Positions 48,438-63,540 of a DNA stretch of 64,000 bases are shown here, in pieces. Within the stretch, counting starts at the first letter, position 1, and the number at the start of each line of letters is the position of its first letter. The notes below the pieces were generated by a model that saw only the letters and a list, made by a program, of their open reading frames with translations, had not been told where the DNA came from and did no database searches. The DNA is taken from positions 124,001 to 188,000 of IMG/VR virus record IMGVR_UViG_3300027771_001853; one strand, 5' to 3'. The position numbers were made by a program, and so were the translations under genes.

Positions 48438-49187
48438 TTAACTAGATGTTATTGTCTCCCAAGATGCCGAAGTTTTAATCATTAATTTACCGTTACCGGT
48501 ACCACCATCTGTTGCATAAACAACCATCCCCGCTGTTGGGCCTACTATTGAGTTCATTTGAGCCGTAGTCATTCTAGGTACTGACATTCCTTTTGTTGTA
48601 GACGAAACATCCAGTATACTAGTAACTCCAGGTGATGATGTCCCTATACCGACACTGTCGTTAGCGGCATCAACATAAAACGTATCATTACTGTTTATAG
48701 TTCTAATGACAAAATCTATATCTAAATTATCTTTATTAGCTTCTATCGCTGTTGTTGTAAGAGTTAGGTGTGTTTTATTACCAGCAGAAAAATTAATAGA
48801 ATTAGTGGAAAAAGCTATTTTAGTATCAGTATCACCCAAATGTACGATATCATTTTGGACGTATATCCCTTTACCAAATGTAGCGTATTCAGCGAATCTT
48901 GATGTCGCACTAACCGCTAAATTATCACTAGAACTATTACCTATGGTAACATTCCCATTAAAATCAACATTACCAGCAAATGGTAATCCAGCTGAATTTG
49001 TTATATCATCTTCTATTAACCATTGACCTGCACGTTTTAACGTACCATTATCAAGTTTAAGTGTTATATGGTCATTATAGTCTATTCCTGATACTACGTC
49101 AAACCCTACCATTATAGTAGCGTTGCCACTAGGTGGTGTTGTTATACCACTAGGGTCTTCTTTTTTGATTCTAATAATTGCTGGCAT
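48438..49187 (-). CDS. Putative tail fibre protein
   Basis: HLGDTDTKIAF and VGIGTSSP...ILDVSSTTKGMSVPRMTTAQMNSI..PTAGMVVY, a repeat common in Bacteroidota and phage fibres. Confidence 0.6.
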   Translation of the reverse strand: MPAIIRIKKEDPSGITTPPSGNATIMVGFDVVSGIDYNDHITLKLDNGTLKRAGQWLIEDDITNSAGLPFAGNVDFNGNVTIGNSSSDNLAVSATSRFAEYATFGKGIYVQNDIVHLGDTDTKIAFSTNSINFSAGNKTHLTLTTTAIEANKDNLDIDFVIRTINSNDTFYVDAANDSVGIGTSSPGVTSILDVSSTTKGMSVPRMTTAQMNSIVGPTAGMVVYATDGGTGNGKLMIKTSASWETITSS

Positions 49188-49206: not shown

Positions 49207-49497
49207 TTATACAAAGTCTGTTCCGTAAAGTACTAGTTCACCATCTATACCTAAAGTACCACCTTGATTTATATATTCATCCGCATGAAATGTTTGCATG
49301 TTTTCAAAGATGCAATAGGTGTCCCCAACTTTGAGTGGGGATGGGTGAGCTCCTAGACTTAACATTTTTAGTAAGTCTTTAGTTCCCGCTACAGTGTGAC
49401 ATAACTGAGTTAACGTCACGCTAGAATAGAAAGTAGTTGGTAGGGGTATGTCCCCACCTTGGAAAACTTCTATTATATTTTTACAATTACAACTCAT
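49207..49497 (-). CDS. Small hypothetical protein
   Basis: 96-aa ORF translationally coupled to the 1051-aa gene. Confidence 0.6.
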   Translation of the reverse strand: MSCNCKNIIEVFQGGDIPLPTTFYSSVTLTQLCHTVAGTKDLLKMLSLGAHPSPLKVGDTYCIFENMQTFHADEYINQGGTLGIDGELVLYGTDFV

Positions 49498-52400
49498 TAC
49501 TTATATAGGTTACCTATTAATGTAGCACTCGCTTTTTTATTGGTGTCTACTCTATTAATAATTATTTGCACTATATCGTTTGGCCCAACGCAGAACGGTA
49601 AAGTTTCTACTATAACATCAGTAATTACCGAATTGGGGTATCTCTTGATGGTAAATGCACTTACATTGTCCACTAAAATCGATTTAAATTTAATACCTTC
49701 ATGCTTCGTAACGTCTATATAAGTGTCAAATCCATCAAAATCTAAGACTGTTGTTGGTACTGGAAAGTTTAACATTACGTCAACAGAATCACCTTCAGTA
49801 TAGTATACCGCTCTTCCTTGGTTACACGGTGTTTCACCACACTGACAGTCTATAAGACCATATCTATCTTTTTCTACTAAGAAATTATGTTGTATTTCAT
49901 CCACACCTAAAGGTTTTAAATAATACCTAAACTGTGATATTGCCCCCATAAATGTCCCTGCAAAATTTTCTGTTATACAATCTACCTCGGAATCCACAAT
50001 TATATCACAACCATCACAACCATCAAACCTAAAAGATTCTAATAAACCTTGTGAACCACCACCCCAACTAATATTAAATGGTACCCCAACTTGTAATTGA
50101 TTTGCTGTATTAAGTTGTCTTGGTATCACTTCTTCAAAATTTCTATCCACGAAAACTGGTCTACCATTAACATAAATTGTTAATGTACCCATTCTAAATT
50201 TCTTTTCCTGTACCCATTTTTTTGTAAAATTTAAATAGGTAGGTAGTTCTATATCATTATACCCAAATACCGAATCTACTCCAGGTATCGGTTCGTGTAT
50301 TAAATCATTTACACCACCTTTATTTTCTAAATCACAACAATCCCAACAATAGTCTCTTTCAAATACAGCACTAACGTAAAGCCAAGGTGCTTCTGTTTGT
50401 CCGGTAAAATCACATATAATATCATCACTAAAACGATTTACTACAGTACATGCTGTTATGTAGGTAAAAGCTGTACCACAATTAGGGTTACCAGAACCTA
50501 CTTTATATGGGTGACCACATCTATCGTAATGTATTGTTTCGTCGGTAGTTCCCGTAACAACACAACCACCAGAGAAATATAAAGCCCTATATCCCACCCT
50601 ATAACCTGTTTCACAATCACCACTTAACATTAGAGCAAAATTATTACTACAACAATCAACATAGTAAGGGTACGTTGAAGCTGAAACACAATCTTCATGT
50701 ACGTTCCCACAGTTATCAGTATGGGTACTACATCCCGCAGTTTGTAGTGTTATAGAATCACCGGAACAAGACGGTTCACAAGTTTCTATACAATTTTCTC
50801 CAGAATAGGGTATCCTAAATTTATTCTCAGCTCTTGTACCCATATAAAAGAATATCCCTTTATTTTCTGGGAACAAATCATTTAATGTGTACCCATCACA
50901 TATATTATTACACCTAGGCCTAATAATGGTTTCCACCGTCCATCCACACTCCACTCTTGTTGGTAGTACCTCATATGGGTAACCTTGTAATTTGTAGAAT
51001 CCTTGATAGAACCCACCATTTAATTCATTATAATAACCTTCACAACTACCAGTAGCACTAGTTATACTGTAATTAATATTATAACTACTATAACCAGTAA
51101 CTGGTTTTAATTTTAAACGACAGTCATAATCGTACGGACTATGTGTTAATCCACTTGGTAGTATGGACCATATATTCATTACGTCATTAGCTGTCCTTGC
51201 ACTTTGTGTTACCACATGCACTGTAACGTCAGATTCATAATAACTACAAGTTGTAGTTTCTGTAACTGGTGAAGTTGTTGTGGTTGTAAATGGTGGCCAA
51301 GCGGTTGTTGTCGTTGTTGTTTCCCCTATCCATCCTTGGTCACAATGAGTACAAGAACTAAATACACCAGCAATTATGGTAGCTTGGCTACCTCCCCAAC
51401 CGGTTGTCCCACTAATTACCCTATAACAATCCGTAGAACAGTCAGGCCATCCCGACTCTAAACGATAATAGCTGTCAGCGGATAATGTTATGTCTAAACA
51501 AGATGAACCCGTTAGAACGACTGTAATCGTCCCACCTGTACTTACACATGGTTCTACCTTATACAATAATTTACATGTTGTTGTAGTTGTGGTTGTTGGT
51601 ACTAATGTGGTAGAACTTGTTGTTGTGGTGAGGTGGGGGTTGTATGTCGTGGTTGTAGTTGTTGGACACAAATCCGAACACACCCCACTAGATGTAGGGT
51701 CACAGCACCCACTAAAAGGACCATTAATCACCAACCCTTGGATGTTAGAACCTATAGTTTGCCCACAACCACTAATAATTTGTCTACAGTGTTCTATACC
51801 ATTAGAGTTTGGTGGTGATAAGACCTCGTAATAACTCCCACCTAATAGTGTGGATGCTGATAAAATCTGGTCAAATTGTACGACATTACCGTTCGCTGAA
51901 CAATTTCTCATCGTATAACAATATCCTGTTATCGGAGGTGAGGTTGTTGTGGTTGTTGTTACCGCTGACCATGGCATTGTTGTACATCCAGAACTTAAGG
52001 ACATAAACGTACTAGCTGTACCCCCAGTAAAATCGGTAACAGTTAATTTGACCCTTGATGGTCCTTTGTAAGTTTGTGCGTATGTATTATCAAAAAATCC
52101 GTACACGGTATCCCCTGTACCAACAAATTGGTATGATTGACCACTGTAACCACCCCAAGAATCACTAGAAGTGTATGCGGTACCAAATGTAGCTAGATTA
52201 AAAGTAGTTCCAGTATATGGGTAAGCTTGTTGTTCCCATTCGTAAGTATATGGTCCGGTACCACCACTTGTAACCCCAGATAACGTGTGGGTAAACGCGG
52301 AACCATTAGTATACTCACAGGCCTTTAACCAATGCATGGTACGTATTGCGTGGTCAAATTGGGAGTGTGCTGGTTGACCGAACCTAAGTGTATTCCAATT

Positions 52401-52652
52401 TGCCGCGGAAACATATAGTCCACCATCACCTCCAGTATCACCAGACATTTTTATTGTATCACCAATAAAGTAATATCCTTCATCGAAAAATGGTGGTTGG
52501 TACCCAAATGCGTTACTAGCATTATTGTAAATATAAGTCAGTGAACCCCCTGGTTGTAGTGGGTTTTCTTGGTCTGATGCCCATATAGCCCCCGGATTAC
52601 AGTAATCTGGATTAGCATATAGTGAAACATGTACGTTACCTGTATAGGCCAT
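49497..52652 (-). CDS. Cys-rich structural protein with poly-Thr linkers and a C-terminal LamG/ConA-like region
   Basis: Several T4-T8 runs. C-terminus GWTVETII...GTLTIYVNGRPV...ISWGGG...FMGAISQFRYYLKPL...EIQHNF. Confidence 0.6.
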   Translation of the reverse strand: MAYTGNVHVSLYANPDYCNPGAIWASDQENPLQPGGSLTYIYNNASNAFGYQPPFFDEGYYFIGDTIKMSGDTGGDGGLYVSAANWNTLRFGQPAHSQFDHAIRTMHWLKACEYTNGSAFTHTLSGVTSGGTGPYTYEWEQQAYPYTGTTFNLATFGTAYTSSDSWGGYSGQSYQFVGTGDTVYGFFDNTYAQTYKGPSRVKLTVTDFTGGTASTFMSLSSGCTTMPWSAVTTTTTTSPPITGYCYTMRNCSANGNVVQFDQILSASTLLGGSYYEVLSPPNSNGIEHCRQIISGCGQTIGSNIQGLVINGPFSGCCDPTSSGVCSDLCPTTTTTTYNPHLTTTTSSTTLVPTTTTTTTCKLLYKVEPCVSTGGTITVVLTGSSCLDITLSADSYYRLESGWPDCSTDCYRVISGTTGWGGSQATIIAGVFSSCTHCDQGWIGETTTTTTAWPPFTTTTTSPVTETTTCSYYESDVTVHVVTQSARTANDVMNIWSILPSGLTHSPYDYDCRLKLKPVTGYSSYNINYSITSATGSCEGYYNELNGGFYQGFYKLQGYPYEVLPTRVECGWTVETIIRPRCNNICDGYTLNDLFPENKGIFFYMGTRAENKFRIPYSGENCIETCEPSCSGDSITLQTAGCSTHTDNCGNVHEDCVSASTYPYYVDCCSNNFALMLSGDCETGYRVGYRALYFSGGCVVTGTTDETIHYDRCGHPYKVGSGNPNCGTAFTYITACTVVNRFSDDIICDFTGQTEAPWLYVSAVFERDYCWDCCDLENKGGVNDLIHEPIPGVDSVFGYNDIELPTYLNFTKKWVQEKKFRMGTLTIYVNGRPVFVDRNFEEVIPRQLNTANQLQVGVPFNISWGGGSQGLLESFRFDGCDGCDIIVDSEVDCITENFAGTFMGAISQFRYYLKPLGVDEIQHNFLVEKDRYGLIDCQCGETPCNQGRAVYYTEGDSVDVMLNFPVPTTVLDFDGFDTYIDVTKHEGIKFKSILVDNVSAFTIKRYPNSVITDVIVETLPFCVGPNDIVQIIINRVDTNKKASATLIGNLYK

Positions 52653-52681
52653 AAAGTAATTATTTATTTATATATAAATAA

Positions 52682-53653
52682 TCAGTAAGGTCGTTTCGAC
52701 TCAACGAATCGCTTTATTTCTTCTACATATTTTATTGCACCGAAATCTGGTGAGTAATTTTGGAACTTTTCTGGGTTATTTTTGTACTCTGTGAATGGAC
52801 ATTTATTAATAAATTCACCCTTATAAAACTTTTCTCCTTTCATCTCATCTAGTATTCCAGCTAAATGAAATATGTTTTTTTCTTCATATCTAGAAACTGG
52901 GTCAGTGGCCCAACTAAAAGCCAATTCAGGGTGTAAAGCTGTTTCTTTTTCAAAATACCACATATTCCATAATATGGACCACATTTCCGCAGTCCAGAAT
53001 TGTATGTGAGCGGGAATTGGGTGTTTGTCCCCAAACTTCTTAGTAGCGTCATATATCCTATTACAATCAATATCTACCTTATGCCAAAAATGATAATCAG
53101 TATCCTTTATAAGATATTGTGCTCCCCCAGATTTACTATTATTTTGTTTTATTACATCCACTGATACACCAACCTTATCTGCCATATCTTCCAATAATTC
53201 GATATCACCTAGTTGTGGGTGCTGTGATTTATACCTATCACAACAACCTTTTATGTAATTATAATCTATGTAACCAGGACATTCAGAAACATAACTTATA
53301 TCATCAAGTAACATTGACCCAAAATCCGGTAGTTTCCTAAATAAAATATCTGAATCAGTTAAGAATATACACTTACCATCTTGTGGGTATTCCTTTAAAT
53401 AGTGTTTTACTAAGTGTGGTTTAATACTTGGGATGTACGACCTATTTGTTCTAGTATCTTTATAAAAATGAATATTATCAGGGTAGTCTCTTAGTAACTT
53501 TTTTAACCCTTCACTTGGTTCTTGAGCTCCATTCATTAAACCAAATATAGCTCTACATTTTTTAATAATCCCAAATTTCTCAAAATTAAAGAATAACATT
53601 CTTATTTGCCAATGAAAGTATGGTACGTCTGGTTGTGCACAGATAAAAATCAT
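52682..53653 (-). CDS. GT-A fold glycosyltransferase resembling peptidyl O-glycosyltransferases (SERGT1/HPAT-like)
   Basis: PYFHWQ, YIPSIKPHLVKHYL, DxD motif FLTDSDILF, GGAQYLI, WTAEMWS and IFHLAG. Confidence 0.7.
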   Translation of the reverse strand: MIFICAQPDVPYFHWQIRMLFFNFEKFGIIKKCRAIFGLMNGAQEPSEGLKKLLRDYPDNIHFYKDTRTNRSYIPSIKPHLVKHYLKEYPQDGKCIFLTDSDILFRKLPDFGSMLLDDISYVSECPGYIDYNYIKGCCDRYKSQHPQLGDIELLEDMADKVGVSVDVIKQNNSKSGGAQYLIKDTDYHFWHKVDIDCNRIYDATKKFGDKHPIPAHIQFWTAEMWSILWNMWYFEKETALHPELAFSWATDPVSRYEEKNIFHLAGILDEMKGEKFYKGEFINKCPFTEYKNNPEKFQNYSPDFGAIKYVEEIKRFVESKRPY

Positions 53654-53704
53654 ATATATTTTTTATATAAAATTAAATTGTTTTTACCTATAGTAAATGG
53701 ATTA

Positions 53705-55627
53705 TCAAATAGAAGAATTACATGACGCACAATCCGTGTAAGAAGCGTCTATAGTGTGTTGTATAGGTCTGGTAGTACTTCCTGCATTATAGTAACACTT
53801 GTCATTAACTTTTATATAATTAGATGAGGTAGGAGCTACCACTAAAGAACCATCCCATGAAGAAATGTTTAATTTAGATTCTACCTCATCTATACGATTG
53901 GCAATACCAATAAACCCATTAGGCCAAATACTATTTATATCTCCAGATGAAGCTCCACAACACATATACCTTGGGTAATTACCAGCAAAATTAATTCCGA
54001 CTATTTTTAATGCTCCACCTACACAACATAAAATCGCTGCACCGGAATCACCTCCGACACCAGGAGATGGGTCACCATCACCAGCTGATTTGAATAATAT
54101 TTGTTGGTCGTACATAAAATTAGGGTTACCTAATTTTATATTAGCAGCATTAACTGTTATTATTACTACGTCAGGATAACTCACACTTAAGATGTTACCA
54201 CTACTTCTACCTACTTTATAAACATAACTCCCCACCAACCCATTTACTTCTGCTGTTGTAGCGTGTTGGTATGGTCCCCAAGCTAGACCTAATATAGTTG
54301 TTGTTGGCTCTTCTGTTAATTCTATAAGTGCAGCGTCTACTTTATTTTGTGTGTAGTTATAACATAGTGGGTGGAATCTTTTCACTGAACCCATCTGTAC
54401 TCCCGCACTTGAATTTCCATTATCAGGATAACTAGGTTGTTGTGTTACGTACCCTGTTGACCAATTTGCTCCTTGTAACCCACCATTAGCAGTTGCACCA
54501 GCGGCAGAACCACAATCTATACCAGGATAATTAATTGGGTCCGCGTTTAGCCCAGCTGAAGCAAAATTATAACCTATAACATGATTATTAGTCACACCAA
54601 CTATTTTATCATCGGTATTATCGTAGGCTAACCACCCTAAAGTACCACTACCCGAACCACCCATAGATGGTGGGACTAAGGTTGTACCAATACTAACACC
54701 ACCAGGAATAGCTCTTTGGTTACTACTAGGTGTATAATAAGCGACACCATGGTCTGAACACGCAGGAACACTAATAGATGTTATATTACCACTGCAATAA
54801 CCTAGATTACCTGGACCATAATTAGGACTACATTGTGTACTTTCAGCTAGTATTAAAGCTTTATCATACACACATGTAGAATGTAATACTATCTCACTTG
54901 AAGTTGATATATCTGTTGGGATACCTCCTAGTTCTGACGGCAATAATTCACTATTACTTAATTCACTTAGGTTTTTCTTTTCTATTACATTTAAAGTAAT
55001 ACAATAAATTTCAGTATCCACATTATTTGTAATTTTTCGTCCCACGTACATAGATGTTAGACCTGTGGAAGTGAATGTACCAGAATATTTGTTTACCACA
55101 TAATCATGATAGGATTGGTGTTCAATTCCGTTAGAGTCGGTATAACCAGAATATATAGGGTCACTAGATATTGTGGCTCCTTTAACTCTGACTGTTGGTT
55201 GGACGTTTATAGTCATTTGTATTCTACCACCACCCCCTACGATTGATGGTGTTATAATATTTCCAGGTGTACACCCACTTTGACCATCACATGGTCTAAA
55301 TAATGTAGAAGTTGTTGGTGGTGAGTATGTTGTTGTCGTTGTGGTACCTGGTTGTGTTGTAGTTGTCGTAGTAGCTGGAGCTGCGGTTGTGGTCGTAGTA
55401 GTAGTAAAACAAGTATCGATTATCAAATCAGAACAGCTTGTACATCCAGAAGCATCTATTATTTGTAATCCGTATGTACCACAACATGCTGTAAAATACA
55501 CACAATCGTAATTTGTTGTAGCTACATTATTACACCCAGTTTCACATCCTTGGTTACAAAGACTTACACTATAAGGTGATACCCCACCACCCATACTAAT
55601 TGTTATACCTGTTAAATTACATGCCAT
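53705..55627 (-). CDS. Cys-rich / poly-Thr protein with trypsin-like (S1) serine protease domain
   Basis: GTLG...VTNNHV (His), VDAALI (Asp), KVGRSSG, GGDSGA (Ser) and VGINFAG. Confidence 0.8.
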   Translation of the reverse strand: MACNLTGITISMGGGVSPYSVSLCNQGCETGCNNVATTNYDCVYFTACCGTYGLQIIDASGCTSCSDLIIDTCFTTTTTTTAAPATTTTTTQPGTTTTTTYSPPTTSTLFRPCDGQSGCTPGNIITPSIVGGGGRIQMTINVQPTVRVKGATISSDPIYSGYTDSNGIEHQSYHDYVVNKYSGTFTSTGLTSMYVGRKITNNVDTEIYCITLNVIEKKNLSELSNSELLPSELGGIPTDISTSSEIVLHSTCVYDKALILAESTQCSPNYGPGNLGYCSGNITSISVPACSDHGVAYYTPSSNQRAIPGGVSIGTTLVPPSMGGSGSGTLGWLAYDNTDDKIVGVTNNHVIGYNFASAGLNADPINYPGIDCGSAAGATANGGLQGANWSTGYVTQQPSYPDNGNSSAGVQMGSVKRFHPLCYNYTQNKVDAALIELTEEPTTTILGLAWGPYQHATTAEVNGLVGSYVYKVGRSSGNILSVSYPDVVIITVNAANIKLGNPNFMYDQQILFKSAGDGDPSPGVGGDSGAAILCCVGGALKIVGINFAGNYPRYMCCGASSGDINSIWPNGFIGIANRIDEVESKLNISSWDGSLVVAPTSSNYIKVNDKCYYNAGSTTRPIQHTIDASYTDCASCNSSI

Positions 55628-55659
55628 ATCTTTATATAAATACTTTAATTAATCTTATT

Positions 55660-57570
55660 TTACAAACAACTCCCATCATCTAAATTAGCTCCAGGATAAT
55701 AATTCGATGCTCCAGGAGGACCTATCGGTGAATTATATGAAGGTGCATTTGGCCCACCCATTGGACACAACCCATATACACCAAAGAACCCACCAGTACA
55801 AGTATCACCAACAAGTGGGTCTGGTGCTATACCGGTCGTACAACAACCACCATCCATACAACCATAAATAAAAGCTATACAAGAACCGTCCTCACAAGTA
55901 GCTGATGGGTCATAATTGAATGAGGTAGCGTCTGTACATCCAAATACACATACTGTTGTAGTGGTTGTCACTATAGCACCACAACAAGAAGTATCCCCAA
56001 CATTCCCATTCCATTGCAAAGTATTAATATTCATTTGTAATGCACCAGCACAATCAATATAAAGCCCATTTATCATAGTGGGTAACGATGGTGGTGGTAC
56101 ACCTATTTCTCCAGTGAAATTATAATTAGCACCATTTGGGTCTAAACAATTACAATAACCAAAACAAGTTCCTAAATCTATTTGAGCACCAGCATAGTAG
56201 TTATATGCTTCACAACCAGGGTAAGGTGACGTAAACCAACCAGTGGGGTTAGTACAACTGCCCGCATTTGGACAATTTGTCCCTACACAATTTCCACCAT
56301 CCATACAACCGTATACAAGTGCTACACATGAACCATCATCACATATCGCATTTGGGTCATAGTTACATGCTTGACTATCTGTACAACCGTCAGGTAAAAT
56401 ACATGAACCATCATCAATAATTGCGGTTGGGTCATAGTTACATGCTGTTGGGTCTGTACAACCGTATATACTTGACGTGGTTGAGGTTGTGGTACAAAGA
56501 CATAAATCACCATTCATCCCAGTATCAACCGGTTGTCCAGCTGGTGGTGGTAAGGTTGGTGGGAACCATTGGTATATATCCCCGACTTGGTTACATTCAT
56601 ATTGTGTCAGACAAAGATTACAACCATCAATAGCTCCTGGTTGGGTGGACCACACTGGTGGGGACAAAGTAATTAAAGGAGAACCACTACATGGTGGACC
56701 AATTAGTTTATAACATTCTTGTAACCCAGTACCATTTAAATTATTCCATGATTGAGCCAAAAACACCGTTCCTGGAACCATACCAGATATGATAGCCGTC
56801 CAATCATACGGGAAGTTCACTTCTACTCTATAGATTGAACCGTCACAACACTTTTCCACACACCAATATGGGTTAGGTGGTTGTGTTGTTAGGGTTGTAG
56901 TGGTACACACATCACCAGGTGGAATAGTACAGCTCTTACACGTTACCGGGGTAGGGTTTATAAGTGTACCGTCAGCTTCAGCACATACATAATTCGCTGT
57001 AAATTCTATAATCTCCCAACAAGCTCTATAGTGAGTAATACTACCATCGAAAAAGCTAACATAAGTCACATCCAATTCTAAGATTGTACCAATAGGGTAT
57101 GACCATACTATAGCATATAAGGTTGGTCCACCTGTTGCTGTTGCCATAAATTCTAGTGTCCCAAATTGTGGACACATTTTTACACCCCTATTTACCACTA
57201 TTGTTGTTGTGGTTGTTGTAGTTTGGTTGCATCCATCACAACATCTACAATATAAAGAAACCTCCGAATCACAAGGTGGACCTGGTGTTGAAGAGGTACA
57301 GTATTGACATATCGCGTCTCTGGCTGATGGTAATAGACTTAACCAATAAGAGTAATTACATGGTTCACCTTGGTCTAAACCACCACAACAAGAGTCTAAG
57401 TTACTTGTACCCGGTTGGTTGGCATTGTTACAACAAGACGTATTATCTTGACACAATTGTTGTGTAGCATAAATTGTATTATTAATTGGAGCTATCCCAA
57501 AGACACAACACGGATAAGGTGTTTGTATTGGGTTAGCTAAAGTTAATTCTGTGGGACAGTACCAAGACAT
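55660..57570 (-). CDS. Cys-rich repeat protein (GCTD..A.NYDP.A..DDGSC repeats) with poly-Thr linkers
   Basis: Three near-complete GCTD...DGSC repeats plus GCMDG variants with insertions. Very high Cys content. Confidence 0.75.
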   Translation of the reverse strand: MSWYCPTELTLANPIQTPYPCCVFGIAPINNTIYATQQLCQDNTSCCNNANQPGTSNLDSCCGGLDQGEPCNYSYWLSLLPSARDAICQYCTSSTPGPPCDSEVSLYCRCCDGCNQTTTTTTTIVVNRGVKMCPQFGTLEFMATATGGPTLYAIVWSYPIGTILELDVTYVSFFDGSITHYRACWEIIEFTANYVCAEADGTLINPTPVTCKSCTIPPGDVCTTTTLTTQPPNPYWCVEKCCDGSIYRVEVNFPYDWTAIISGMVPGTVFLAQSWNNLNGTGLQECYKLIGPPCSGSPLITLSPPVWSTQPGAIDGCNLCLTQYECNQVGDIYQWFPPTLPPPAGQPVDTGMNGDLCLCTTTSTTSSIYGCTDPTACNYDPTAIIDDGSCILPDGCTDSQACNYDPNAICDDGSCVALVYGCMDGGNCVGTNCPNAGSCTNPTGWFTSPYPGCEAYNYYAGAQIDLGTCFGYCNCLDPNGANYNFTGEIGVPPPSLPTMINGLYIDCAGALQMNINTLQWNGNVGDTSCCGAIVTTTTTVCVFGCTDATSFNYDPSATCEDGSCIAFIYGCMDGGCCTTGIAPDPLVGDTCTGGFFGVYGLCPMGGPNAPSYNSPIGPPGASNYYPGANLDDGSCL

Positions 57571-57606
57571 ATTTTTATATTATTTTATTCATTAGTGATA
57601 AATAGT

Positions 57607-60600
57607 TTAGAACGGTAGACTTTGGCAGCTAGCTGGAATTGGCACCAACAACCCAGCATTACATTCAGTACAATTTGCCCATGTTTGGTTTAACGTAGTA
57701 TACCCGTCTGTATCTAGGTATGACATAGAGGTAGGTATAACTTGGTAACATTGTGATTGTAATGCGCTACCACCTACCGGTAATAAGATTAATTCTATTA
57801 CCGTACCAACCACAAATGAAGTTAATAAATTTTCTAAATTACTCCCCGTAGTAGGTTTATATTCCTGGTAATAAAGAGTACCTAGTTTTGGACAACACGC
57901 TCTAATTAAAAGATTACTAGATACTGGTTCAGTTGTGGTGGTTGTGGTACCTGGACAACATCCCTCTGCTAACTCAGTATAACCATGACCTGGTGGGTTA
58001 TAACTGATTAAATGGGCACTTAACTGGCTACAAGAATGGGGAGAAGGGTTACAGATAGTAACAAAACTATTAACGTTAACTAAAGTAGTAGCATTACCTA
58101 TAACCTCCACACAAAGAATTTTATCTCCAACCACAGGAATATTGAAGGTACCCGCAAAGGTATCTCCCACATTCAGTCCTTGGATGTATGTTAGTAGTGA
58201 CCCTGTTGCGGTATAGTGTTTATATGGTGCACAACACATTCTAATACCTAATACCACTGCAACTGATGTGGTTGTGGTGGTATTACCTAAACAACAGTCT
58301 GGGTCTGAAGCTGCACCCCAAACCCATAGTGGTGGGTTAGGTACGGTCTGGAGTGATGAACCAGCACTTATTGAACTAGAAGTTACATATATAGGATAAA
58401 TGTCTTTGTCTTGGGTAACACCATAAATGTTTTGGTTATAACAATATAACCCAAAGGTTACAACCCCACCCATATTAACCGTACCTAATAGAACACCAGT
58501 ATTCAAATCATAATAAGCTAATTCACTTCCTGTACTAGTTGCTAAAGCGACTATTAATGTATTACTCCCCGCTAAGTATAATATATCCCCCTGAACAACA
58601 TCACTCCCTGTTAAAGCTATAGAACTAGATAGTACAGCTGTATTGGTGGTTATATCTATGCTACATATATCCCCCATACATGGTGTAGCGTTCCAAGAAC
58701 TACCCCCAATTAAAGTAGTAGAATCTATAGCCGTTAAACCATTACCTATTTGAGCTGGAGTCGTAATCTCTCTGTTCCATGTAACATTACAAGTAACGGG
58801 GTCTATAATATATTCTTGAATTTTTATACTATAATATACCCATATTAGATTACCATACCTTGCTATATCTGCACTATAGCCTAGATTTTGTGTCGCTGTA
58901 AATAATAAATTAGTCTGATTTGTCGTATGGTTATAATTGTAAATGCCTGGTGGATTTGAACCATCTACAAATAATACACCACAAGAATCACATAGAGCTG
59001 TGGTTGTGGTGGTTGTTGTTGGTGACGTGGTGGTTGTGGTAGTTGGGCAACAAGTACCTAAATTATTATTACCAAGGAAAGCATCTAACTCGATACAGTC
59101 ATTCTGCATTGAGTATCCTACCGCGGTATCAACTATAAGACCACTAGGGTTAGTTATGATATTCCAACAAAGATTAGGTGTAGTTACCGAAGCACTACTT
59201 AAACTACCATAAAAGGCTTGGCCTATATTGTAACTTTGAATAAACGCTAATAGGTTACCTGTGACCACATACTGAGTAAAAGGGTAACAACATTCTTCTA
59301 GCCCTAACAAACTTGATGAGGTTGTGGTTGTGGTAGCTGGACAACAACCATTTAAAAGGTCTGGGAAACCATAACCGTTGTAAAGTTGTGTGTTACCATT
59401 TAAATCAGTACAGTCATTTGAGTATACCGTAGGACTAAAAAGCCATTCAAACTGACCCGTTTGTACTTGAGGGGAAGATAAAGGTATATTCATATCCATC
59501 TCCATACAAGCTGTAAGGTCCGTCCCATTAGGTAATGTTATTGTCATTACAAAAGCTCTAGTAAATGGTGGAAGACTATAGTCTATAAGGTTATAAAGTG
59601 AACTATTATAAATTACCTCATATTCCGTATAAGGGTCACAACACAATTTAAGACCAACTAAAGCACTAGTAGTTGTAGTTGTTGTTGGTGGTGAGTATGT
59701 TGTTGTTTCACAACATGGTGTAGCGTTCGCTGATACCAGACAATCTGGTTCGTATTGGTAAATACAGTTAGGTCCTGAACTACAGGGTTGACAAAAACAA
59801 TTAACCGTACAAAGACACAAACGTCCAGCCCAAGATAACATATCGTTAGGTGCATTATTGTGCATTTTTCCTATCACTTGACTCCAGTGGTCACTATAAA
59901 GAAAATCTTGAGGCCATGAATTAGTTGTGTTTATTACATTTAACGCGTCTATTAACATTTCCCAATGAGCGTTAATTGTTACTGGTCCTGATAAAAAATA
60001 TGACCCATTTGATGCGGATGAAACAAAACCGTTAATTTTATAATAATACCCGTCACCATTATATAAAGAACCAGTATTTTCACATATGTAACTTTGACCG
60101 ACAACAATACTAGGGTTTATAAAGAAATAGTTATCGAAGATTTCACTAGTTCCGTATGTAGCAACCAAGTAATCTGTATATATTTGATTATTAGTGTATT
60201 GTCCATTAACTGTCGTAATACCAGGTGGTGTAAGTTCAGTATCACTGCTATCACAACCTATCGCGTCTACACCTGGAACTGGTGTAAGTGACGAAACACA
60301 TTCCCACCACTGTGTTGTAGTTGTTGTTACTGAACATTGAAAGTACCATGGTGATTGAGCAATCCAACTTAAACAGGTAACACAGTTAGGTTGACCTGTT
60401 GTCCAATCGGCGGGTGGGAGTGGTGGTGTTGTAAAACCACCCGTAAGTATTACCCAACTTGGGCAAGAGGTATCTATAATTTTAAAGCAAGAAGTGAAGA
60501 CAACCCCTGCAGGGTCCGATACTGTCAACGCAAGAACCGTTTGTCCTGGAGTGTAAGCAGCATTTGCTATTATAACATATAAAGGACTACCCAATGTGAC

Positions 60601-63540
60601 CGTATATTGGTTGTATGGTGAACAACAATCTTCTAACCCCAGTCTGTCACAAATAATTGTTGTTGTGGTTGTTGTTACTGGTAGACAACATGGGTTTCCT
60701 TGAGCTGCTACATCACATAACACGTAACTACTATAGACACAATTTAATGCAGGTGGTACACAGGGTTGACAAAAACAAGGGTTAAAGCAACCACATTCTA
60801 CAACATTTATTAATAACGTATCTCCAGCGGCATTGTTAGTCATTCTTACAATAACTTGGTCCCAAGTATCTGACGTTACGAAATCTTGAGCCCATCCATT
60901 AGTTTGGTTTATACCGTTTAGAATCGTTATAAGCATAGCCCAAGTAGATAATGTGGTTGTTTGACCTGAGAAGACGTAGGAAATATTAGCATTACTTAAT
61001 TGTATCTCACCCACCTTTTCATGTCTACCTAAACCACTATACAACAAACTTAAATTTTCACAACCAGCTAGTGATAGTGTGGCTGTTGGGTTTATATAGT
61101 GATAGAACATGTATAGTGCTGCAGCACCAAAATTCTGGGTAATATGGTTAACAGCCTCAACTCTATTTTGGTATGGTGTATTTCCACCATTAATCCCGGC
61201 TGGTATAACGTATGTTGTTGGGAATTGGTCCCCACACCAGTTTGCGTCTATACCGGGTACAAGTGGTGGTGGTGTAATACATTCGTGCCAATCATCTGGA
61301 GGACAACACCCTAATTCCATACCTGGAAAATAATACGTTCCTGCCACTATAGCGATATTAAAATCAATACAACCCATATCGGTAGTAGGTGATAACCACA
61401 AAAACCCATTATTTATTACATTTATGGGTGATGGATTATTGATTACTTCAGCACAAGTTTGTATTACCGAACCGTCAGGTAAAGTCAACTCGAATATATG
61501 AGCACTACCAATACTAAGCCCTTGTATTAAACTATATAAGAAATTACCACTAGGGATAATATATTGGTCATAAGGTGGACAACAAAGTTCCACACCTATC
61601 GCTAGTGTCGTAGTTGTGGTTGTTGTTGGTCCTGGTGTTGTGGAAGTTGTTGTTACTGGTTGACAACATGGTATTGCGTTAGCAGCGATATCACAAATAC
61701 TAAAATCATTAAATATACAAGGTGTGACCCCAGGTGTGAAACATGGTTGACAAAAACAAGGTGGTTGGTTACATGTACAAGGTCCCCCATAGGTATTCCA
61801 TGACTCCGACATGTTATTTGACTCCTGTTGTATTAACATAACAACCGTGAATCTAGAATCGATATAAGTAAAAACTCCTGGTGTGATACTATTAAGATAA
61901 TCTATAAACGATTGCCAGTTGTTGATGGCACCACTACCGACATAAAGCACATTTGCAGCGTTAGTTATAATATGTGTAGCTTTACTATAACCCATACCTC
62001 CCTGTGCGTATGGGTTTGTTGATGGAACAGACACACATTGGTTTGCCAAGGTATTCGGTGGAGTACCGGTTTCATGATAAAAGCTGCCCCAGGTTACATT
62101 AATGGGGATATTCCCATTTATTTGTTCATCCATTAAATATTCACACGCTCCAATAATGGAGATAGAAGCATGTGGTTTTAGGGTTAAACTATCACAGGAG
62201 GAACCATTAGTGATAGTTGCTAATGGTGGTGTTATGCATTCGTACCACACTGTAGTTGTAGTTGTTGTTAGTGGTCCGGTAGTGGTTGTTGTGGTTGGGG
62301 TACTAGTAGTGGTTGTGGTTGTTTGACCAGGTAACGTGGTGGACGTGGTTGTTTGCCCTGGACAACAAGGTATACCATTAGCTGATATAAGTGCTATAGA
62401 TAACGCATTACAACCTAGCATATTTATTAGTCCGTTTGATGTTAGGTCCGATTGGGTCTCCACCATATTAGCGACAGGTATACCAACAATAGGGTTACAT
62501 AATGGTTTCCAACATTCATTTTGTACTATCCCACCTGACACTAATAAGTTTGGTATTTGGAAGGCATAATTATCATCACAATTAAGTGAATTAAGTAATA
62601 GTAATAAATTACCTGTGGCCCCATATTGTACTGGTACACCAGTACCCACACAACAACTTTCTATCCCACATGTCACACAAGGGTCACCAGTAGTTGTAGT
62701 GGTACAACAATTATAACATGTGGTTGTAGTTGTGGTTATAGGAGCTACTGTTGTGGTAGTAGTTGTTAGGGGTTGTATTCCAGTTGTAGTGATAGTGATA
62801 ATAGGGCACTGTTGACAATCGACAACACTACCAAGTAGTCCTCTTGTTGGTGGTGTTCCAAAAGTGTTTCCACACTGTCCTCCAACATACCCAGTATGCC
62901 AATCACCACTACCCGGATTATTACTTACATCTATATCATAACTGGTTGGTCTGGGACTGTCACCCTCATAGTACATACATGTACCATCAGATAATTGAAT
63001 AACATCACCCTGACTTATAGGCCCTATAGCAGCAGTTAACTGGTTATGGAATGCCTGATTATTTGTATCAGTATTTGGTAAAAAACATGAACCTAAAGGC
63101 GGGGCCCCTGGTGTAGGAACTACTGGTACTGGATTAAAAGCGAGTGAATTATCACAATAACGCCAAGAATGATTGAGTCCGAAAACGGATGGTTGGGTTT
63201 CACACGCATCACAATCACCATATGGTTCAATAAACCAACCAGAATTTTGTAAAGAATGACCACCAAGATATTCAACATGTATAGCTTCTGGTGTTGCGAA
63301 GTCCCCTATATACTCAAAACAAGTCCAAAATTGTGGATATGGAGTTGAGTATAGTCTAATAAAGTCCCCAGGTACTATTTGATGCCCTGCACTTTGTTGG
63401 TAATAATAATTCTGAAAATGTTCATTGTTAGCTATTGTATTTCCTGGAGGCGAACCGGATTTACCAATATTACAATCGAAAGGGACTGGTACACTAAAAG
63501 GTTCGCTAGTAAAACAAGCTCTATATTTTTTATATCCCAT
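57607..63540 (-). CDS. Giant modular Cys-rich protein with poly-Thr linkers
   Basis: 1977 aa. Seven G[LIV]xxCC.PY.QY modules, three W.EC...CFCQPC...PCC modules and a propeller-like segment (YSADIAR...IGNGLT...VVQGDILY...WGAAS), mostly separated by T-runs. Confidence 0.8.
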   Translation of the reverse strand: MGYKKYRACFTSEPFSVPVPFDCNIGKSGSPPGNTIANNEHFQNYYYQQSAGHQIVPGDFIRLYSTPYPQFWTCFEYIGDFATPEAIHVEYLGGHSLQNSGWFIEPYGDCDACETQPSVFGLNHSWRYCDNSLAFNPVPVVPTPGAPPLGSCFLPNTDTNNQAFHNQLTAAIGPISQGDVIQLSDGTCMYYEGDSPRPTSYDIDVSNNPGSGDWHTGYVGGQCGNTFGTPPTRGLLGSVVDCQQCPIITITTTGIQPLTTTTTTVAPITTTTTTCYNCCTTTTTGDPCVTCGIESCCVGTGVPVQYGATGNLLLLLNSLNCDDNYAFQIPNLLVSGGIVQNECWKPLCNPIVGIPVANMVETQSDLTSNGLINMLGCNALSIALISANGIPCCPGQTTTSTTLPGQTTTTTTSTPTTTTTTGPLTTTTTTVWYECITPPLATITNGSSCDSLTLKPHASISIIGACEYLMDEQINGNIPINVTWGSFYHETGTPPNTLANQCVSVPSTNPYAQGGMGYSKATHIITNAANVLYVGSGAINNWQSFIDYLNSITPGVFTYIDSRFTVVMLIQQESNNMSESWNTYGGPCTCNQPPCFCQPCFTPGVTPCIFNDFSICDIAANAIPCCQPVTTTSTTPGPTTTTTTTLAIGVELCCPPYDQYIIPSGNFLYSLIQGLSIGSAHIFELTLPDGSVIQTCAEVINNPSPINVINNGFLWLSPTTDMGCIDFNIAIVAGTYYFPGMELGCCPPDDWHECITPPPLVPGIDANWCGDQFPTTYVIPAGINGGNTPYQNRVEAVNHITQNFGAAALYMFYHYINPTATLSLAGCENLSLLYSGLGRHEKVGEIQLSNANISYVFSGQTTTLSTWAMLITILNGINQTNGWAQDFVTSDTWDQVIVRMTNNAAGDTLLINVVECGCFNPCFCQPCVPPALNCVYSSYVLCDVAAQGNPCCLPVTTTTTTIICDRLGLEDCCSPYNQYTVTLGSPLYVIIANAAYTPGQTVLALTVSDPAGVVFTSCFKIIDTSCPSWVILTGGFTTPPLPPADWTTGQPNCVTCLSWIAQSPWYFQCSVTTTTTQWWECVSSLTPVPGVDAIGCDSSDTELTPPGITTVNGQYTNNQIYTDYLVATYGTSEIFDNYFFINPSIVVGQSYICENTGSLYNGDGYYYKINGFVSSASNGSYFLSGPVTINAHWEMLIDALNVINTTNSWPQDFLYSDHWSQVIGKMHNNAPNDMLSWAGRLCLCTVNCFCQPCSSGPNCIYQYEPDCLVSANATPCCETTTYSPPTTTTTTSALVGLKLCCDPYTEYEVIYNSSLYNLIDYSLPPFTRAFVMTITLPNGTDLTACMEMDMNIPLSSPQVQTGQFEWLFSPTVYSNDCTDLNGNTQLYNGYGFPDLLNGCCPATTTTTSSSLLGLEECCYPFTQYVVTGNLLAFIQSYNIGQAFYGSLSSASVTTPNLCWNIITNPSGLIVDTAVGYSMQNDCIELDAFLGNNNLGTCCPTTTTTTSPTTTTTTTALCDSCGVLFVDGSNPPGIYNYNHTTNQTNLLFTATQNLGYSADIARYGNLIWVYYSIKIQEYIIDPVTCNVTWNREITTPAQIGNGLTAIDSTTLIGGSSWNATPCMGDICSIDITTNTAVLSSSIALTGSDVVQGDILYLAGSNTLIVALATSTGSELAYYDLNTGVLLGTVNMGGVVTFGLYCYNQNIYGVTQDKDIYPIYVTSSSISAGSSLQTVPNPPLWVWGAASDPDCCLGNTTTTTSVAVVLGIRMCCAPYKHYTATGSLLTYIQGLNVGDTFAGTFNIPVVGDKILCVEVIGNATTLVNVNSFVTICNPSPHSCSQLSAHLISYNPPGHGYTELAEGCCPGTTTTTTEPVSSNLLIRACCPKLGTLYYQEYKPTTGSNLENLLTSFVVGTVIELILLPVGGSALQSQCYQVIPTSMSYLDTDGYTTLNQTWANCTECNAGLLVPIPASCQSLPF

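What the first reader, a model, noticed from the sequence alone, without database searches (positions are those of the whole stretch)
53880..54715. Intact trypsin-like serine protease tethered by a poly-Thr stalk to a Cys-rich module
Seen in sequence: the complete triad context (TNNHV / VDAALI / GGDSGA) follows an N-terminal Cys-rich segment and a TTTTTTTAAPATTTTTTQPGTTTTTTY linker. The gene has the TATTTAT motif and no signal peptide. Inference: a virion-displayed protease, perhaps digesting host S-layer, gliding adhesins or biofilm protein, or processing the neighbouring giant proteins. This is not the gp21-type prohead protease fold.
Basis: partly seen in the sequence, partly recalled or inferred. 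Interest (0 to 1): 0.65.

Follow-up and report, generated by a model that had tools for sequence, protein, structure and literature searches.

The report
Phage NAL1-type serine protease on stalk
A 640-residue gene of an uncultured marine jumbo phage encodes an apparently active chymotrypsin-fold serine protease of the rice NARROW LEAF 1 (NAL1) type. A poly-threonine spacer joins it to a small cysteine-rich module, and it sits inside a block of giant fibre-like genes; what it cuts is unknown.

Summary
ORF 53705-55627 (-) encodes 640 aa: a Cys-rich module (1-73), a poly-Thr spacer (74-106), and a protease with TNNHV/VDAALI/GGDSGA. The given coordinates cover only the protease domain.

- **What it is:** residues 156-601 match rice NAL1 (ATP-binding domain plus serine-protease domain) at Z 26.4 over 320 residues. 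Streptogrisin and alpha-lytic proteases follow at Z 17-19.
- **Catalytic residues:** His349, Asp431 and Ser528 are invariant in 86 unique relatives. So are Lys217 and Asp239, which align with NAL1 ATP/Mg ligands.
- **Family:** 186 IMG/VR loci carry a relative. None was found in GenBank phages, and a narrow pattern scan of prokaryote genomes found none. Pfam and NCBIfam do not hit this protein; PHROG 20754 ("protease") does.
- **Not the head protease:** the genome has its own gp21-type protease elsewhere.
- **Context:** the gene lies in a ~30-kb island that holds every poly-Thr run in the genome. Island proteins have 4-9% Cys against a 1% median. The island also holds a candidate glycosyltransferase.
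- **Relatives:** they sit beside fibre-like giants and carry other modules on Thr/Pro/Ser linkers.

Virion display and host-surface digestion remain plausible but untested. Verdict: a new variant of a known kind, of moderate interest.

The parts
53705..55627 (-). Complete CDS, 640 aa (P0001), stop codon included
   Evidence: Orthologues are 76-79% identical and of equal length. dN/dS is 0.215.
55636..55642 (-). TATTTAT heptamer 8 nt upstream of the ATG; candidate promoter element of this phage
   Evidence: The heptamer lies within 60 nt upstream of 17 of 36 ORFs. A promoter role is inferred.
55409..55627 (-). N-terminal Cys-rich module, residues 1-73 (10 Cys, all conserved)
   Evidence: It is 85-86% identical among orthologues. 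It was found only in the three orthologues. There is no Pfam hit. The SprB-repeat resemblance is a lead only.
55310..55408 (-). Poly-Thr/Ala/Pro spacer, residues 74-106 (three runs of 6-7 Thr)
   Evidence: It uses mixed ACN codons and is not a tandem DNA repeat. Runs of 5 or more Thr occur only in the island G000 173497-203235.
55163..55309 (-). Residues 107-155, unassigned stretch with two conserved Cys
   Evidence: pLDDT is below 50 in the model. It lies outside the family HMM.
54893..55162 (-). NAL1 'ATP-binding domain'-like domain, residues 156-245, with invariant Lys217 and Asp239
   Evidence: The structural alignment with NAL1 begins at model residue 50, which is P0001 156, against NAL1 91. 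The profile alignment puts family K/K/D/V on NAL1 R120/K139/D166/V167. The ligand list comes from PMC12012508.
54731..54892 (-). Cys-bearing connector, residues 246-299 (least constrained part)
   Evidence: pLDDT is low. dN/dS is 0.48.
53837..54730 (-). Serine-protease domain (double beta-barrel), residues 300-597; His349, Asp431, Ser528
   Evidence: PHROG 20754 'protease' scores E 9.5e-13.
54581..54583 (-). His349 codon (aligned with NAL1 His234)
54335..54337 (-). Asp431 codon
54044..54046 (-). Ser528 codon in GGDSG (aligned with the NAL1 GDSGS serine)
53708..53836 (-). C-terminal extension, residues 598-640, shared with the family (consensus NGKTYWQxG); most constrained part
   Evidence: It is 84-88% identical among orthologues. 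dN/dS is 0.09.
52682..53653 (-). Downstream neighbour, 323 aa, phrog_4417; candidate glycosyltransferase for the Thr-rich linkers (inferred)
   Evidence: It recurs near the protease in 4 of 34 relative groups.
49497..52652 (-). Island neighbour, 1051 aa, 5 poly-Thr runs, 4.6% Cys
55660..57570 (-). Island neighbour, 636 aa, 2 poly-Thr runs, 9.4% Cys
57607..63540 (-). Island neighbour, 1977 aa, 15 poly-Thr runs, 5.5% Cys

Best explanation
The gene encodes an active endopeptidase of the NAL1 type.

- **Catalytic unit (residues 156-601).** A small nucleotide-binding-like domain is packed against a chymotrypsin-fold domain. Ser528 is the nucleophile, His349 the base and Asp431 the third triad member. 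The GGDSG backbone forms the oxyanion hole.
- **Tether.** An extended poly-Thr spacer holds this unit to a conserved, probably disulfide-bonded or metal-stapled, Cys-rich N-terminal module. The spacer is probably O-glycosylated by the adjacent phrog_4417 protein.
- **Setting.** The protein is one member of a 30-kb island of giant proteins built on the same plan of Cys-rich modules joined by poly-Thr linkers. I take these for the phage's external fibre or adhesin apparatus.
- **Most likely action.** It works outside the cell, either carried on the virion or released with it, and cuts a protein at the host surface during adsorption.

Shown by computation: the fold, the triad, family membership, the architecture, the selection and the gene context.

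Inferred: catalytic activity, glycosylation of the spacer, the anchoring role of the N-terminal module, the extracellular location and the substrate.
For: **Fold and family**
- The model of residues 107-640 matches NAL1 8pmi_B at Z 26.4, rmsd 3.6 A, with 320 residues aligned. Model 50-495 lies on NAL1 91-458, which is the ATP-binding domain plus the protease domain.
- S1E proteases (S. fradiae proteinase 2sfa, SGPB, alpha-lytic, Lysobacter L1/L5) score Z 17-19 and are covered almost whole.
- The family profile hits NAL1 by sequence at E 1e-5. TNnHV lies on NAL1 TNHHV (His234) and GDSGS on GDSGS.
- 8 of 32 members match Pfam NAL1_N, best E 4e-4.
- Atlas structural neighbours include bacterial and plant NAL1_N/Nal1_C clusters.

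**Conservation**
- His349, Asp431, Ser528, Gly526, Asp527, Lys217 and Asp239 are each present in 86 of 86 unique members.
- dN/dS is 0.2 in the protease domain and 0.14 in the ABD-like domain.

**Not the head protease**
- A separate Peptidase_S77 gene exists.

**Context**
- All runs of 5 or more Thr in the 297.6-kb genome lie in seven co-oriented genes at G000 173497-203235.
- Those proteins have 4.1-9.4% Cys against a genome median of 1.06%.

**Family-wide pattern**
- 186 IMG/VR loci carry a relative.
- The gene just upstream is most often a large modular protein with Thr/Pro linkers and Cys modules.
- Tail-fibre PHROGs lie at +1 in 4 groups, and virion-structural and adaptor PHROGs lie nearby.
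- Members carry extra modules on TP/T/S linkers: DUF285 repeats, or a Cys module shared with the neighbouring fibre-like protein.

**Glycosyltransferase lead**
- The 323-aa neighbour has an invariant D-S-D motif, and its nearest named Atlas neighbours are HPAT clusters.
- HtrL_YibB-type proteins lie at -2/-3 in 5 groups.

**Occurrence**
- The gene is near-identical in marine metagenomes from at least 12 studies.
Against: - There is no direct evidence of location. No proteome, no RNA run and no cultured relative are available.
- The N-terminal module has no detectable relative outside the three orthologues, so its anchoring or binding role is a guess.
- NAL1, the closest solved relative, is an intracellular cage protease whose triad is only aligned in the hexamer (PMC12012508). 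That fits an intracellular role as well.
- The models are of middling confidence (pLDDT 57-62, pTM 0.67-0.71). I could not read coordinates, so triad geometry was not measured.
- TATTTAT also precedes a DnaB-like helicase gene, so it does not mark late or structural genes only.
- The glycosyltransferase assignment of the neighbour is a lead only: no Pfam hit and no PDB sequence hit.
Confidence: 0.5

Rival explanations
1. Assembly or maturation protease. The enzyme trims or processes the co-encoded giant poly-Thr/Cys-rich proteins in trans, for example by removing chaperone or pro-segments. It need not stay on the virion.
For: - The gene is embedded in the island of giants, and this synteny is conserved.
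- In relatives the gene directly follows a large fibre-like gene.
- Peptidases linked to structural genes in jumbo phages are generally proposed to serve virion maturation (PMC7824862).
Against: - Fusion of family members to binding-type modules (DUF285, the neighbour's Cys module) suits a targeted, displayed enzyme better than a transient processing factor.
- The 26 Cys, 25 of them identical in all four orthologues, suggest a protein built for an oxidising environment.
- No cleavage-site pattern in the neighbours was sought or found.
Confidence: 0.2
2. Intracellular NAL1-like cage protease. It forms trimers or hexamers in the infected cell and degrades host regulators or defence proteins.
For: - The closest solved relative, NAL1, is an intracellular hexameric cage protease.
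- The ABD-like domain and two of its ligand-contact residues are invariant.
- Patchy phage peptidases have been proposed to target host proteins (PMC7824862).
Against: - The NAL1 N-terminal segment that stacks trimers into hexamers has no counterpart here.
- Cys content is 4.1%, and the poly-Thr spacer is shared only with the fibre-like island.
- Family members are fused to surface-type repeats.
- The oligomer prediction gave no answer.
Confidence: 0.12
3. Cell-wall peptide endopeptidase. It acts like the bacteriolytic alpha-lytic-type proteases L1/L5 of Lysobacter and cuts peptidoglycan peptide bridges during entry.
For: S1E enzymes, including Lysobacter L1 and L5, are the second-best structural class at Z 17-18, covering almost their whole chains.
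Against: - NAL1 matches far better and over two domains.
- The phage already carries an Amidase_2 domain in a 2205-aa protein for wall attack.
- A long flexible stalk is not typical of tail-tip lysins (general knowledge).
Confidence: 0.1
4. Inactive protease-fold module that serves only as a binding or structural head.
For: None specific. Pfam trypsin models do not hit P0001.
Against: The triad, the GDSG motif and the neighbouring glycines are invariant in 86 of 86 unique relatives at ~30% overall identity.
Confidence: 0.03

Closest known systems
Rice NARROW LEAF 1 (NAL1) serine protease (PDB 7Y77, 8PMI, 8PMG; Pfam NAL1_N PF25608 / Nal1_C PF25819)
   Same: - It has the same two-domain unit, an ATP-binding domain plus a chymotrypsin-fold protease domain: Z 26.4, 320 residues aligned, NAL1 91-458.
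- The His and Ser motifs align residue for residue.
- Family K198/K217/D239/I240 stand at the positions of NAL1 ATP/Mg contacts R120/K139/D166/V167.
   Different: - Sequence identity is about 19%, and P0001 itself does not reach the Pfam NAL1 models.
- It has no counterpart of the NAL1 N-terminal domain (1-88) that stacks trimers into the hexamer cage. The contacts R122 and K123 are not conserved.
- It adds a Cys-rich module, a poly-Thr spacer, a C-terminal extension and 26 Cys.
- It is encoded by a phage next to fibre-like giants, whereas NAL1 is a plant regulator of transcription factors.
- Its oligomeric state is unknown.
Streptogrisin / alpha-lytic protease group (MEROPS S1E by my own knowledge; PDB 3SGB, 2ALP, Lysobacter L1/L5 5MRR/5MRT)
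   Same: - It has the same double beta-barrel, covered almost completely: Z 17-19, 173-189 aligned of 181-199 residues.
- These are extracellular, disulfide-stabilised enzymes, and some are bacteriolytic.
   Different: - S1E enzymes have an N-terminal folding pro-region, not a NAL1-type domain.
- The match is clearly weaker than the match to NAL1.
- P0001 has a ~45-residue insert between His and Asp and lineage-specific Cys-Cys pairs.
HtrA/DegP proteases (S1C)
   Same: Chymotrypsin fold at Z 14-15. By my own knowledge, the Asp motif VDAAL resembles the HtrA-type D-[IVL]-A-[LV] motif.
   Different: The matched chains add PDZ-type modules (own knowledge), which P0001 gave no Pfam sign of, and the Z-score is lower.
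T4 gp21-type prohead protease (Peptidase_S77)
   Same: Both are phage-encoded serine proteases.
   Different: S77 has an unrelated fold by my own knowledge. The genome has its own S77 gene at G000 240342-240809, and P0001 does not match it.
PHROG 20754 ('protease') and uncharacterised viral proteins such as A0A7S9XDX3 of Virus NIOZ-UU157
   Same: P0001 residues 294-556 match the PHROG at E 9.5e-13. The BFVD top hit is E 3.2e-22. So the protease unit is already catalogued among phage proteins.
   Different: Typical members are 400-450 aa without the N-terminal Cys module and stalk. No function or link to NAL1 was recorded in the sources I could search.

Membership tests
PA-clan (chymotrypsin-fold) serine protease | Two six-stranded beta-barrels | tested here: met
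   VIA-align gives Z 17-19 to S1E proteases, with 173-189 residues aligned of 181-199, on model residues 199-487. Foldseek gives TMt about 0.7. Model confidence is middling.
PA-clan (chymotrypsin-fold) serine protease | His, Asp, Ser in that order in conserved motifs, plus a GDSG oxyanion-hole motif | tested here: met
   His349 (TNNHV), Asp431 (VDAAL) and Ser528 (GGDSG) are each 86/86 conserved. The His and Ser motifs align with those of NAL1.
PA-clan (chymotrypsin-fold) serine protease | Triad geometry (Ser-His-Asp hydrogen-bond distances) | not testable with these tools
   Model coordinates are not returned, so only fold and alignment ranges are available.
PA-clan (chymotrypsin-fold) serine protease | Match to the Pfam Trypsin / Trypsin_2 models | tested here: not met
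   P0001 has no Pfam or NCBIfam hit even at E<=10. One of 32 relatives hits Trypsin (3e-4) and one hits Trypsin_2 (0.12).
PA-clan (chymotrypsin-fold) serine protease | Peptidase activity | not testable with these tools
   Needs an enzyme assay.
NAL1-type protease | ATP-binding domain packed on the protease domain as one unit | tested here: met
   Z 26.4, rmsd 3.6 A, 320 aligned; P0001 156-601 against NAL1 91-458. The domain limits of NAL1 come from PMC12012508.
NAL1-type protease | Sequence-level relation to NAL1 / Pfam NAL1_N and Nal1_C | tested here: inconclusive
   The family profile hits NAL1 chains at E 1e-5. NAL1_N is hit by 8/32 members (best 4e-4) and Nal1_C by 1/32 (0.12). P0001 alone hits neither.
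NAL1-type protease | ATP/Mg-contact residues (R120, I121, R122, K123, K139, D166, V167) | tested here: inconclusive
   The positions of R120, K139, D166 and V167 are kept as K198, K217, D239 and I240; K217 and D239 are invariant. R122 and K123 are T200 and N201. Binding was not tested.
NAL1-type protease | Trimer / hexamer cage | tested here: inconclusive
   The two-copy complex prediction gave no answer, score 0.00. Three or six copies exceed the size cap.
NAL1-type protease | NAL1 N-terminal domain (1-88), whose strand exchange builds the hexamer | tested here: not met
   The structural alignment starts at NAL1 residue 91. P0001 has a Cys-rich module, a poly-Thr spacer and an unassigned stretch upstream instead.
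T4 gp21-type prohead protease (Peptidase_S77) | Match to PF03420 | tested here: not met
   PF03420 matches another gene, G000 240342-240809, at 90 bits. P0001 has no Pfam hit.
SprB-repeat adhesin module (for residues 1-75) | Match to Pfam SprB PF13573 | tested here: not met
   No Pfam hit at E<=10. The only sign is Atlas feature similarity of 0.82-0.84 to SprB clusters, which is below the tool's own trust level.

The most novel reading that the evidence does not exclude
The phage displays a protease as a 'depolymerase for proteins'. In this reading a NAL1-type serine protease is held on a glycosylated, mucin-like poly-Thr stalk on the virion. It stands among a forest of giant stalked adhesins made by the same 30-kb island, and it clears a proteinaceous surface layer or receptor shield of the host. 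The stalk's glycans, added by the island's own phrog_4417 transferase, would protect the tether from the enzyme it carries. The wider phage family (186 or more IMG/VR loci) would then be a widespread class of virion-borne proteases. It would also be a viral branch of the lineage that gave plants NAL1.
Probability: 0.25. Interest if true: 0.8.

Novelty: new variant of a known kind. Interest (0 to 1): 0.5.

Why it matters
- **Virion enzymes.** By my own knowledge, the well-studied virion-borne host-surface enzymes of phages attack polysaccharide or peptidoglycan. My literature searches found no NAL1-type or chymotrypsin-fold virion protease. If this family acts on host surface proteins, it adds a new class of enzyme to phage adsorption. 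It would also add a source of stable, modular extracellular proteases.
- **Origin of NAL1.** The link to NAL1 gives a family known mainly from a rice yield gene a large viral branch that keeps the odd ATP-binding domain. That bears on where plant NAL1 came from and on what its nucleotide pocket is for.
- **The island.** A contiguous poly-Thr/Cys-rich island with an embedded candidate glycosyltransferase suggests mucin-like glycosylated appendages on a marine jumbo phage. This can be tested.
- **Annotation.** For annotation, the result replaces 'hypothetical protein' with a specific, checkable assignment.

Tried and rejected
- **Family libraries.** Pfam and NCBIfam on the whole protein and on its parts gave nothing, even at E<=10.
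- **PDB by sequence.** The single sequence gave only a chance antibody hit.
- **Cultured phages.** tblastn of P0001 and of two distant relatives against 50,697 GenBank phage records gave no match, and megablast of the 10-kb region gave none.
- **Prokaryote genomes.** The scan of 185,579 species genomes found no relative. It used one peptide pattern only, so this absence is weak. Atlas structural neighbours do include bacterial NAL1-like clusters.
- **N-terminal Cys module.**
  - BLAST and an orthologue HMM found no significant relative elsewhere in the genome.
  - The word search among 5.8 billion proteins found it in none beyond the orthologues.
  - The SprB-repeat lead is not supported by Pfam.
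- **Oligomer.** Complex prediction with two copies of residues 156-601 returned no answer, score 0.00. This is evidence neither for nor against.
- **Neighbour as glycosyltransferase.** A profile of five homologues found no informative PDB chain. The idea rests on a D-S-D motif and Atlas neighbours only.
- **Tandem repeat.** No repeat underlies the poly-Thr stretch.
- **Sequencing runs.** All holders are DNA contigs and none is on record as RNA. The laid contigs were fragmentary, showed no length variation in the spacer and added nothing on expression.
- **Big search not run.** I did not run the search of protein representatives.
- **Antisense ORF.** The + strand ORF 55341-55511 (poly-Val) is the antisense of the poly-Thr stretch, and I rejected it as a gene.
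Full report
**1. What is at the locus**

The reported span, 53880-54715, lies inside a single long ORF on the minus strand, 53705-55627. It encodes 640 aa, stored as P0001.

TNNHV holds His349, VDAALI holds Asp431 and GGDSGA holds Ser528. I checked their codons by translation.

The N-terminal 73 residues contain 10 Cys. Residues 74-106 are the quoted Thr-rich spacer. It is encoded by mixed ACN codons and is not a DNA tandem repeat.

TATTTAT lies 8 nt upstream of the ATG. The same heptamer lies within 60 nt upstream of 17 of 36 ORFs in the window. One of them is a DnaB-like helicase gene, so it is a plausible general promoter element rather than a mark of structural genes.

The N-terminus has no basic or hydrophobic signal-peptide character.

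The only ORF on the other strand, 55341-55511, is the poly-Val antisense of the poly-Thr stretch.

**2. The genome**

The window is bases 124001-188000 of a 297,623-bp IMG/VR virus record, estimated 93% complete.

It is a contractile-tailed jumbo phage. The window holds the following:
- a tail sheath and a T4-type baseplate protein;
- a gp32-like single-strand-binding protein and a family-B polymerase;
- a DnaB-like helicase and a ribonucleotide reductase;
- a protein with a Peptidase_S74 domain.

Its polymerase is only about 25% identical to the nearest cultured phages, which infect Salinibacter. The lineage therefore has no cultured relative, and the host is unknown.

The gene occurs nearly unchanged in marine water, sediment and sponge metagenomes from at least 12 studies.

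**3. Is it a gene under selection?**

Three orthologues of 640-642 aa are 76-79% identical. They sit on contigs of up to 262 kb, and one is from Tara Oceans. Synteny is conserved.

Against one orthologue, dN/dS is 0.215 overall. By part:

| Part | dN/dS |
|---|---|
| C-terminal extension (598-640) | 0.09 |
| ABD-like domain (156-245) | 0.14 |
| Protease domain (300-597) | 0.20 |
| Connector (246-299) | 0.48 |

All 26 Cys are conserved, 25 of them in all four sequences. The Cys-rich module and the C-terminal extension are the best conserved parts.

**4. What the protease is**

Pfam and NCBIfam give nothing for P0001, even at permissive thresholds. PHROG 20754, annotated 'protease', matches residues 294-556 at E 9.5e-13.

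Word-based searches found distant relatives of about 26-34% identity. Most are 400-450 aa, none is named, and none has a precomputed Pfam domain. In alignments of 17 and then 32 sequences the His, Asp and Ser are invariant.

A local HMM of the short relatives covers P0001 187-597. This shows that the family unit begins well before the protease domain.

The structural evidence is as follows:

| Comparison | Result |
|---|---|
| AlphaFold2 model of 280-640 | pLDDT 62.5, pTM 0.71 |
| Foldseek against PDB, that model | rice NAL1 first, E 1.4e-8; then streptogrisin B and alpha-lytic protease |
| AlphaFold2 model of 107-640 | pLDDT 56.8, pTM 0.67 |
| VIA-align, second model against NAL1 8pmi_B | Z 26.4, rmsd 3.6 A, 320 aligned; P0001 156-601 on NAL1 91-458 |
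| VIA-align against S1E proteases | Z 17-19, nearly whole chains |
| VIA-align against HtrA proteases | Z 14-15 |

By sequence, the family profile reaches NAL1 at E 1e-5. The family's TNnHV lies on NAL1 TNHHV, so the invariant His equals the catalytic His234. GDSGS lies on GDSGS.

Eight of 32 members weakly match Pfam NAL1_N. Structural neighbours in the ESM Atlas include phage clusters, bacterial clusters carrying NAL1_N or Nal1_C, and the plant NAL1 cluster.

The more exact identity is a NAL1-type two-domain protease.

I could not measure triad distances, because the tools do not return coordinates.

**5. The second domain**

NAL1 consists of three parts:
- an N-terminal domain, residues 1-88;
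- an ATP-binding domain, residues 89-172;
- the protease domain, residues 184-458.

In NAL1, ATP-Mg is held by R120, I121, R122, K123, K139, D166 and V167. ATP does not change NAL1 activity and is thought to stabilise loops. NAL1 trimers form through contacts between the ATP-binding and protease domains, and trimers stack into a hexamer through an N-terminal strand (PMC12012508).

The profile alignment places family residues as follows:

| NAL1 residue | P0001 residue |
|---|---|
| R120 | K198 |
| K139 | K217 |
| D166 | D239 |
| V167 | I240 |
| R122 | T200 (not kept) |
| K123 | N201 (not kept) |

K217 and D239 are present in 86 of 86 unique relatives, and K198 is K or R in 85 of 86.

The pocket is thus partly conserved. 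Whether it binds a nucleotide is open. NAL1's hexamer-forming N-terminal domain has no counterpart here. A two-copy complex prediction gave no answer.

**6. Architecture**

| Residues | Part |
|---|---|
| 1-73 | Cys-rich module |
| 74-106 | Poly-Thr spacer |
| 107-155 | Unassigned stretch |
| 156-245 | ABD-like domain |
| 246-299 | Variable Cys-bearing connector |
| 300-597 | Protease domain |
| 598-640 | Conserved C-terminal extension, shared with the family |

The protease domain has a ~45-residue insert between His and Asp and two lineage-specific Cys-Cys pairs.

The Cys-rich module has no significant relative in the genome. It has none among proteins of comparable length in the 5.8-billion-protein collection beyond the orthologues.

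Its language-model features resemble SprB-repeat clusters at 0.82-0.84. That is below the level the tool itself calls trustworthy, and Pfam does not confirm it.

**7. Context in this genome**

Runs of five or more Thr occur in only six proteins of the 281 ORFs of the genome. All six lie in one co-oriented block, G000 173497-203235.

Their sizes are 1051, 640 (the protease), 636, 1977, 4512 and 399 aa. A 280-aa Cys-rich protein also lies in the block. Cys content there is 4.1-9.4%, against a genome median of 1.06%.

The one gene in the block without these traits is the 323-aa gene just downstream of the protease, which belongs to phrog_4417. It has an invariant D-S-D motif in five homologues. 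Its nearest named Atlas neighbours are hydroxyproline O-arabinosyltransferase-like and DUF7164 clusters.

I read it as a candidate glycosyltransferase for the Thr-rich linkers. This is a lead, not a result: Pfam and a PDB profile search gave nothing.

The genome has a separate gp21-type prohead protease and only one NAL1-type gene.

**8. Context in relatives**

IMG/VR holds 186 loci with a relative. The best 80 fall into 34 groups at 80% identity. The narrow pattern scan of prokaryote genomes found none, and GenBank phages gave no match.

Around the protease gene in those loci:
- The gene just upstream is most often a large modular protein with Thr/Pro linkers and Cys-containing modules. This holds in 16 of 34 groups.
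- Tail-fibre PHROGs lie just downstream in 4 groups.
- Virion-structural and adaptor PHROGs lie nearby.
- HtrL_YibB-type proteins lie at -2/-3 in 5 groups, and phrog_4417 proteins occur in 4 groups.

Ten groups have family members with extra parts of 60 aa or more. These parts are usually joined to the protease through TP, T or S linkers. They include:
- DUF285 repeats, shared with another protein of the same locus;
- a Cys module 45-48% identical to one in the fibre-like neighbour family;
- a PBP domain.

'Protease unit, flexible linker, small binding-type module' is therefore a recurring plan of the family. The window's protein is the version with the module at the N-terminus.

**9. How it most likely works**

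The identity is secure: an active NAL1-type serine endopeptidase with Ser528, His349 and Asp431. I put that at about 0.9.

The location and the substrate are inferred. Four points favour an enzyme that works outside the cell as part of, or alongside, the phage's fibre apparatus:
- the exclusive sharing of poly-Thr linkers and high Cys content with the island giants;
- the family's habitual place beside fibre-like and tail-fibre genes;
- the fusion of relatives to binding modules;
- the lack of any link to head genes.

The poly-Thr stretch would act as an extended spacer. If glycosylated, it would resist the enzyme it carries. I know this logic from the O-glycosylated linkers of cellulases, and I recall that virion O-glycosylation by phage transferases has been described for mycobacteriophages. 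Both points are from my own knowledge and were not checked here.

I put the composite picture at about 0.5.

The rivals are:
- a trans-acting maturation protease for the giants (0.2);
- an intracellular NAL1-like cage protease aimed at host proteins (0.12);
- a wall-peptide endopeptidase like Lysobacter L1/L5 (0.1);
- an inactive fold (0.03).

**10. Novelty and verdict**

The protease unit is already catalogued as a PHROG 'protease' and as unnamed viral proteins. NAL1 and its bacterial relatives are known.

As far as my literature searches reach, four things are new:
- the assignment of this phage family to the NAL1 type, with the conserved ABD pocket;
- the family's consistent place in fibre-gene neighbourhoods;
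- the stalked modular architecture;
- the poly-Thr/Cys-rich island with a candidate glycosyltransferase.

I rate it a new variant of a known kind, with interest 0.5. The virion display and the proposed substrates remain untested.

Noticed in passing
window 52682-53653 (-): A 323-aa protein of phrog_4417 (E 1.2e-65). It has an invariant D-S-D motif, and its nearest named Atlas neighbours are hydroxyproline O-arabinosyltransferase-like (HPAT) and DUF7164 clusters. It is the only gene in the poly-Thr island that lacks poly-Thr. It recurs near the protease in 4 of 34 relative groups. It is a candidate glycosyltransferase for the Thr-rich linkers.
   Followed up: partly
window 49497-64000 and on to G000 203235 (locus L087): A contiguous ~30-kb island of co-oriented genes holds every run of 5 or more Thr in the 297.6-kb genome. 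Its proteins have 4-9% Cys. It includes a 4512-aa ORF (G000 187576-201114) with 43 poly-Thr runs and a weak Lcl_C adhesin-domain hit.
   Followed up: partly
window 14805-21422 (-): A 2205-aa ORF carries an N-acetylmuramoyl-L-alanine amidase (Amidase_2) domain at residues 1927-2046. It is probably a giant virion-borne wall hydrolase.
   Followed up: no
window, upstream of 17 of 36 ORFs (e.g. 55636-55642, 28881-28887, 6523-6529, all -): The heptamer TATTTAT, often as C/G-TATTTAT, lies 12-46 nt before start codons. It precedes structural genes and also a DnaB-like helicase gene. It is a likely promoter element and differs from T4's late TATAAATA.
   Followed up: partly
protein P0022 (ENA contig of 3853 nt): An 866-aa database protein joins an N-terminal part carrying nucleotidyltransferase-type Pfam domains (PF27444, PF08335, PF01909) to residues ~213-640 of P0001 at 100% identity. 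It is probably a chimeric contig or gene call.
   Followed up: no
window 42141-43010 (+): A 289-aa protein has a Peptidase_S74 (chaperone of endosialidase) domain, the usual self-cleaving tail-fibre chaperone. It lies on the opposite strand to most genes.
   Followed up: no
window 43003-45711 (-): The family-B DNA polymerase is only ~25% identical to its nearest cultured relatives (Salinibacter phages, then Nostoc/Anabaena phages). The phage is a deep-branching, uncultured jumbo lineage.
   Followed up: partly
IMG/VR loci L021, L035, L044, L052, L059 and Atlas row 4: Relatives of the protease carry varied C-terminal additions behind TP/T/S linkers: DUF285 repeats, Cys modules shared with the neighbouring fibre-like protein, Ser-rich tails and a PBP (PF01161) domain.
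   Followed up: partly
window 48438-49187 (-): The orthologue of this 249-aa protein carries a precomputed Pfam PTL_trimer (PF26696) hit. The window's own copy gave no Pfam hit and only weak PHROG hits of unknown function.
   Followed up: no
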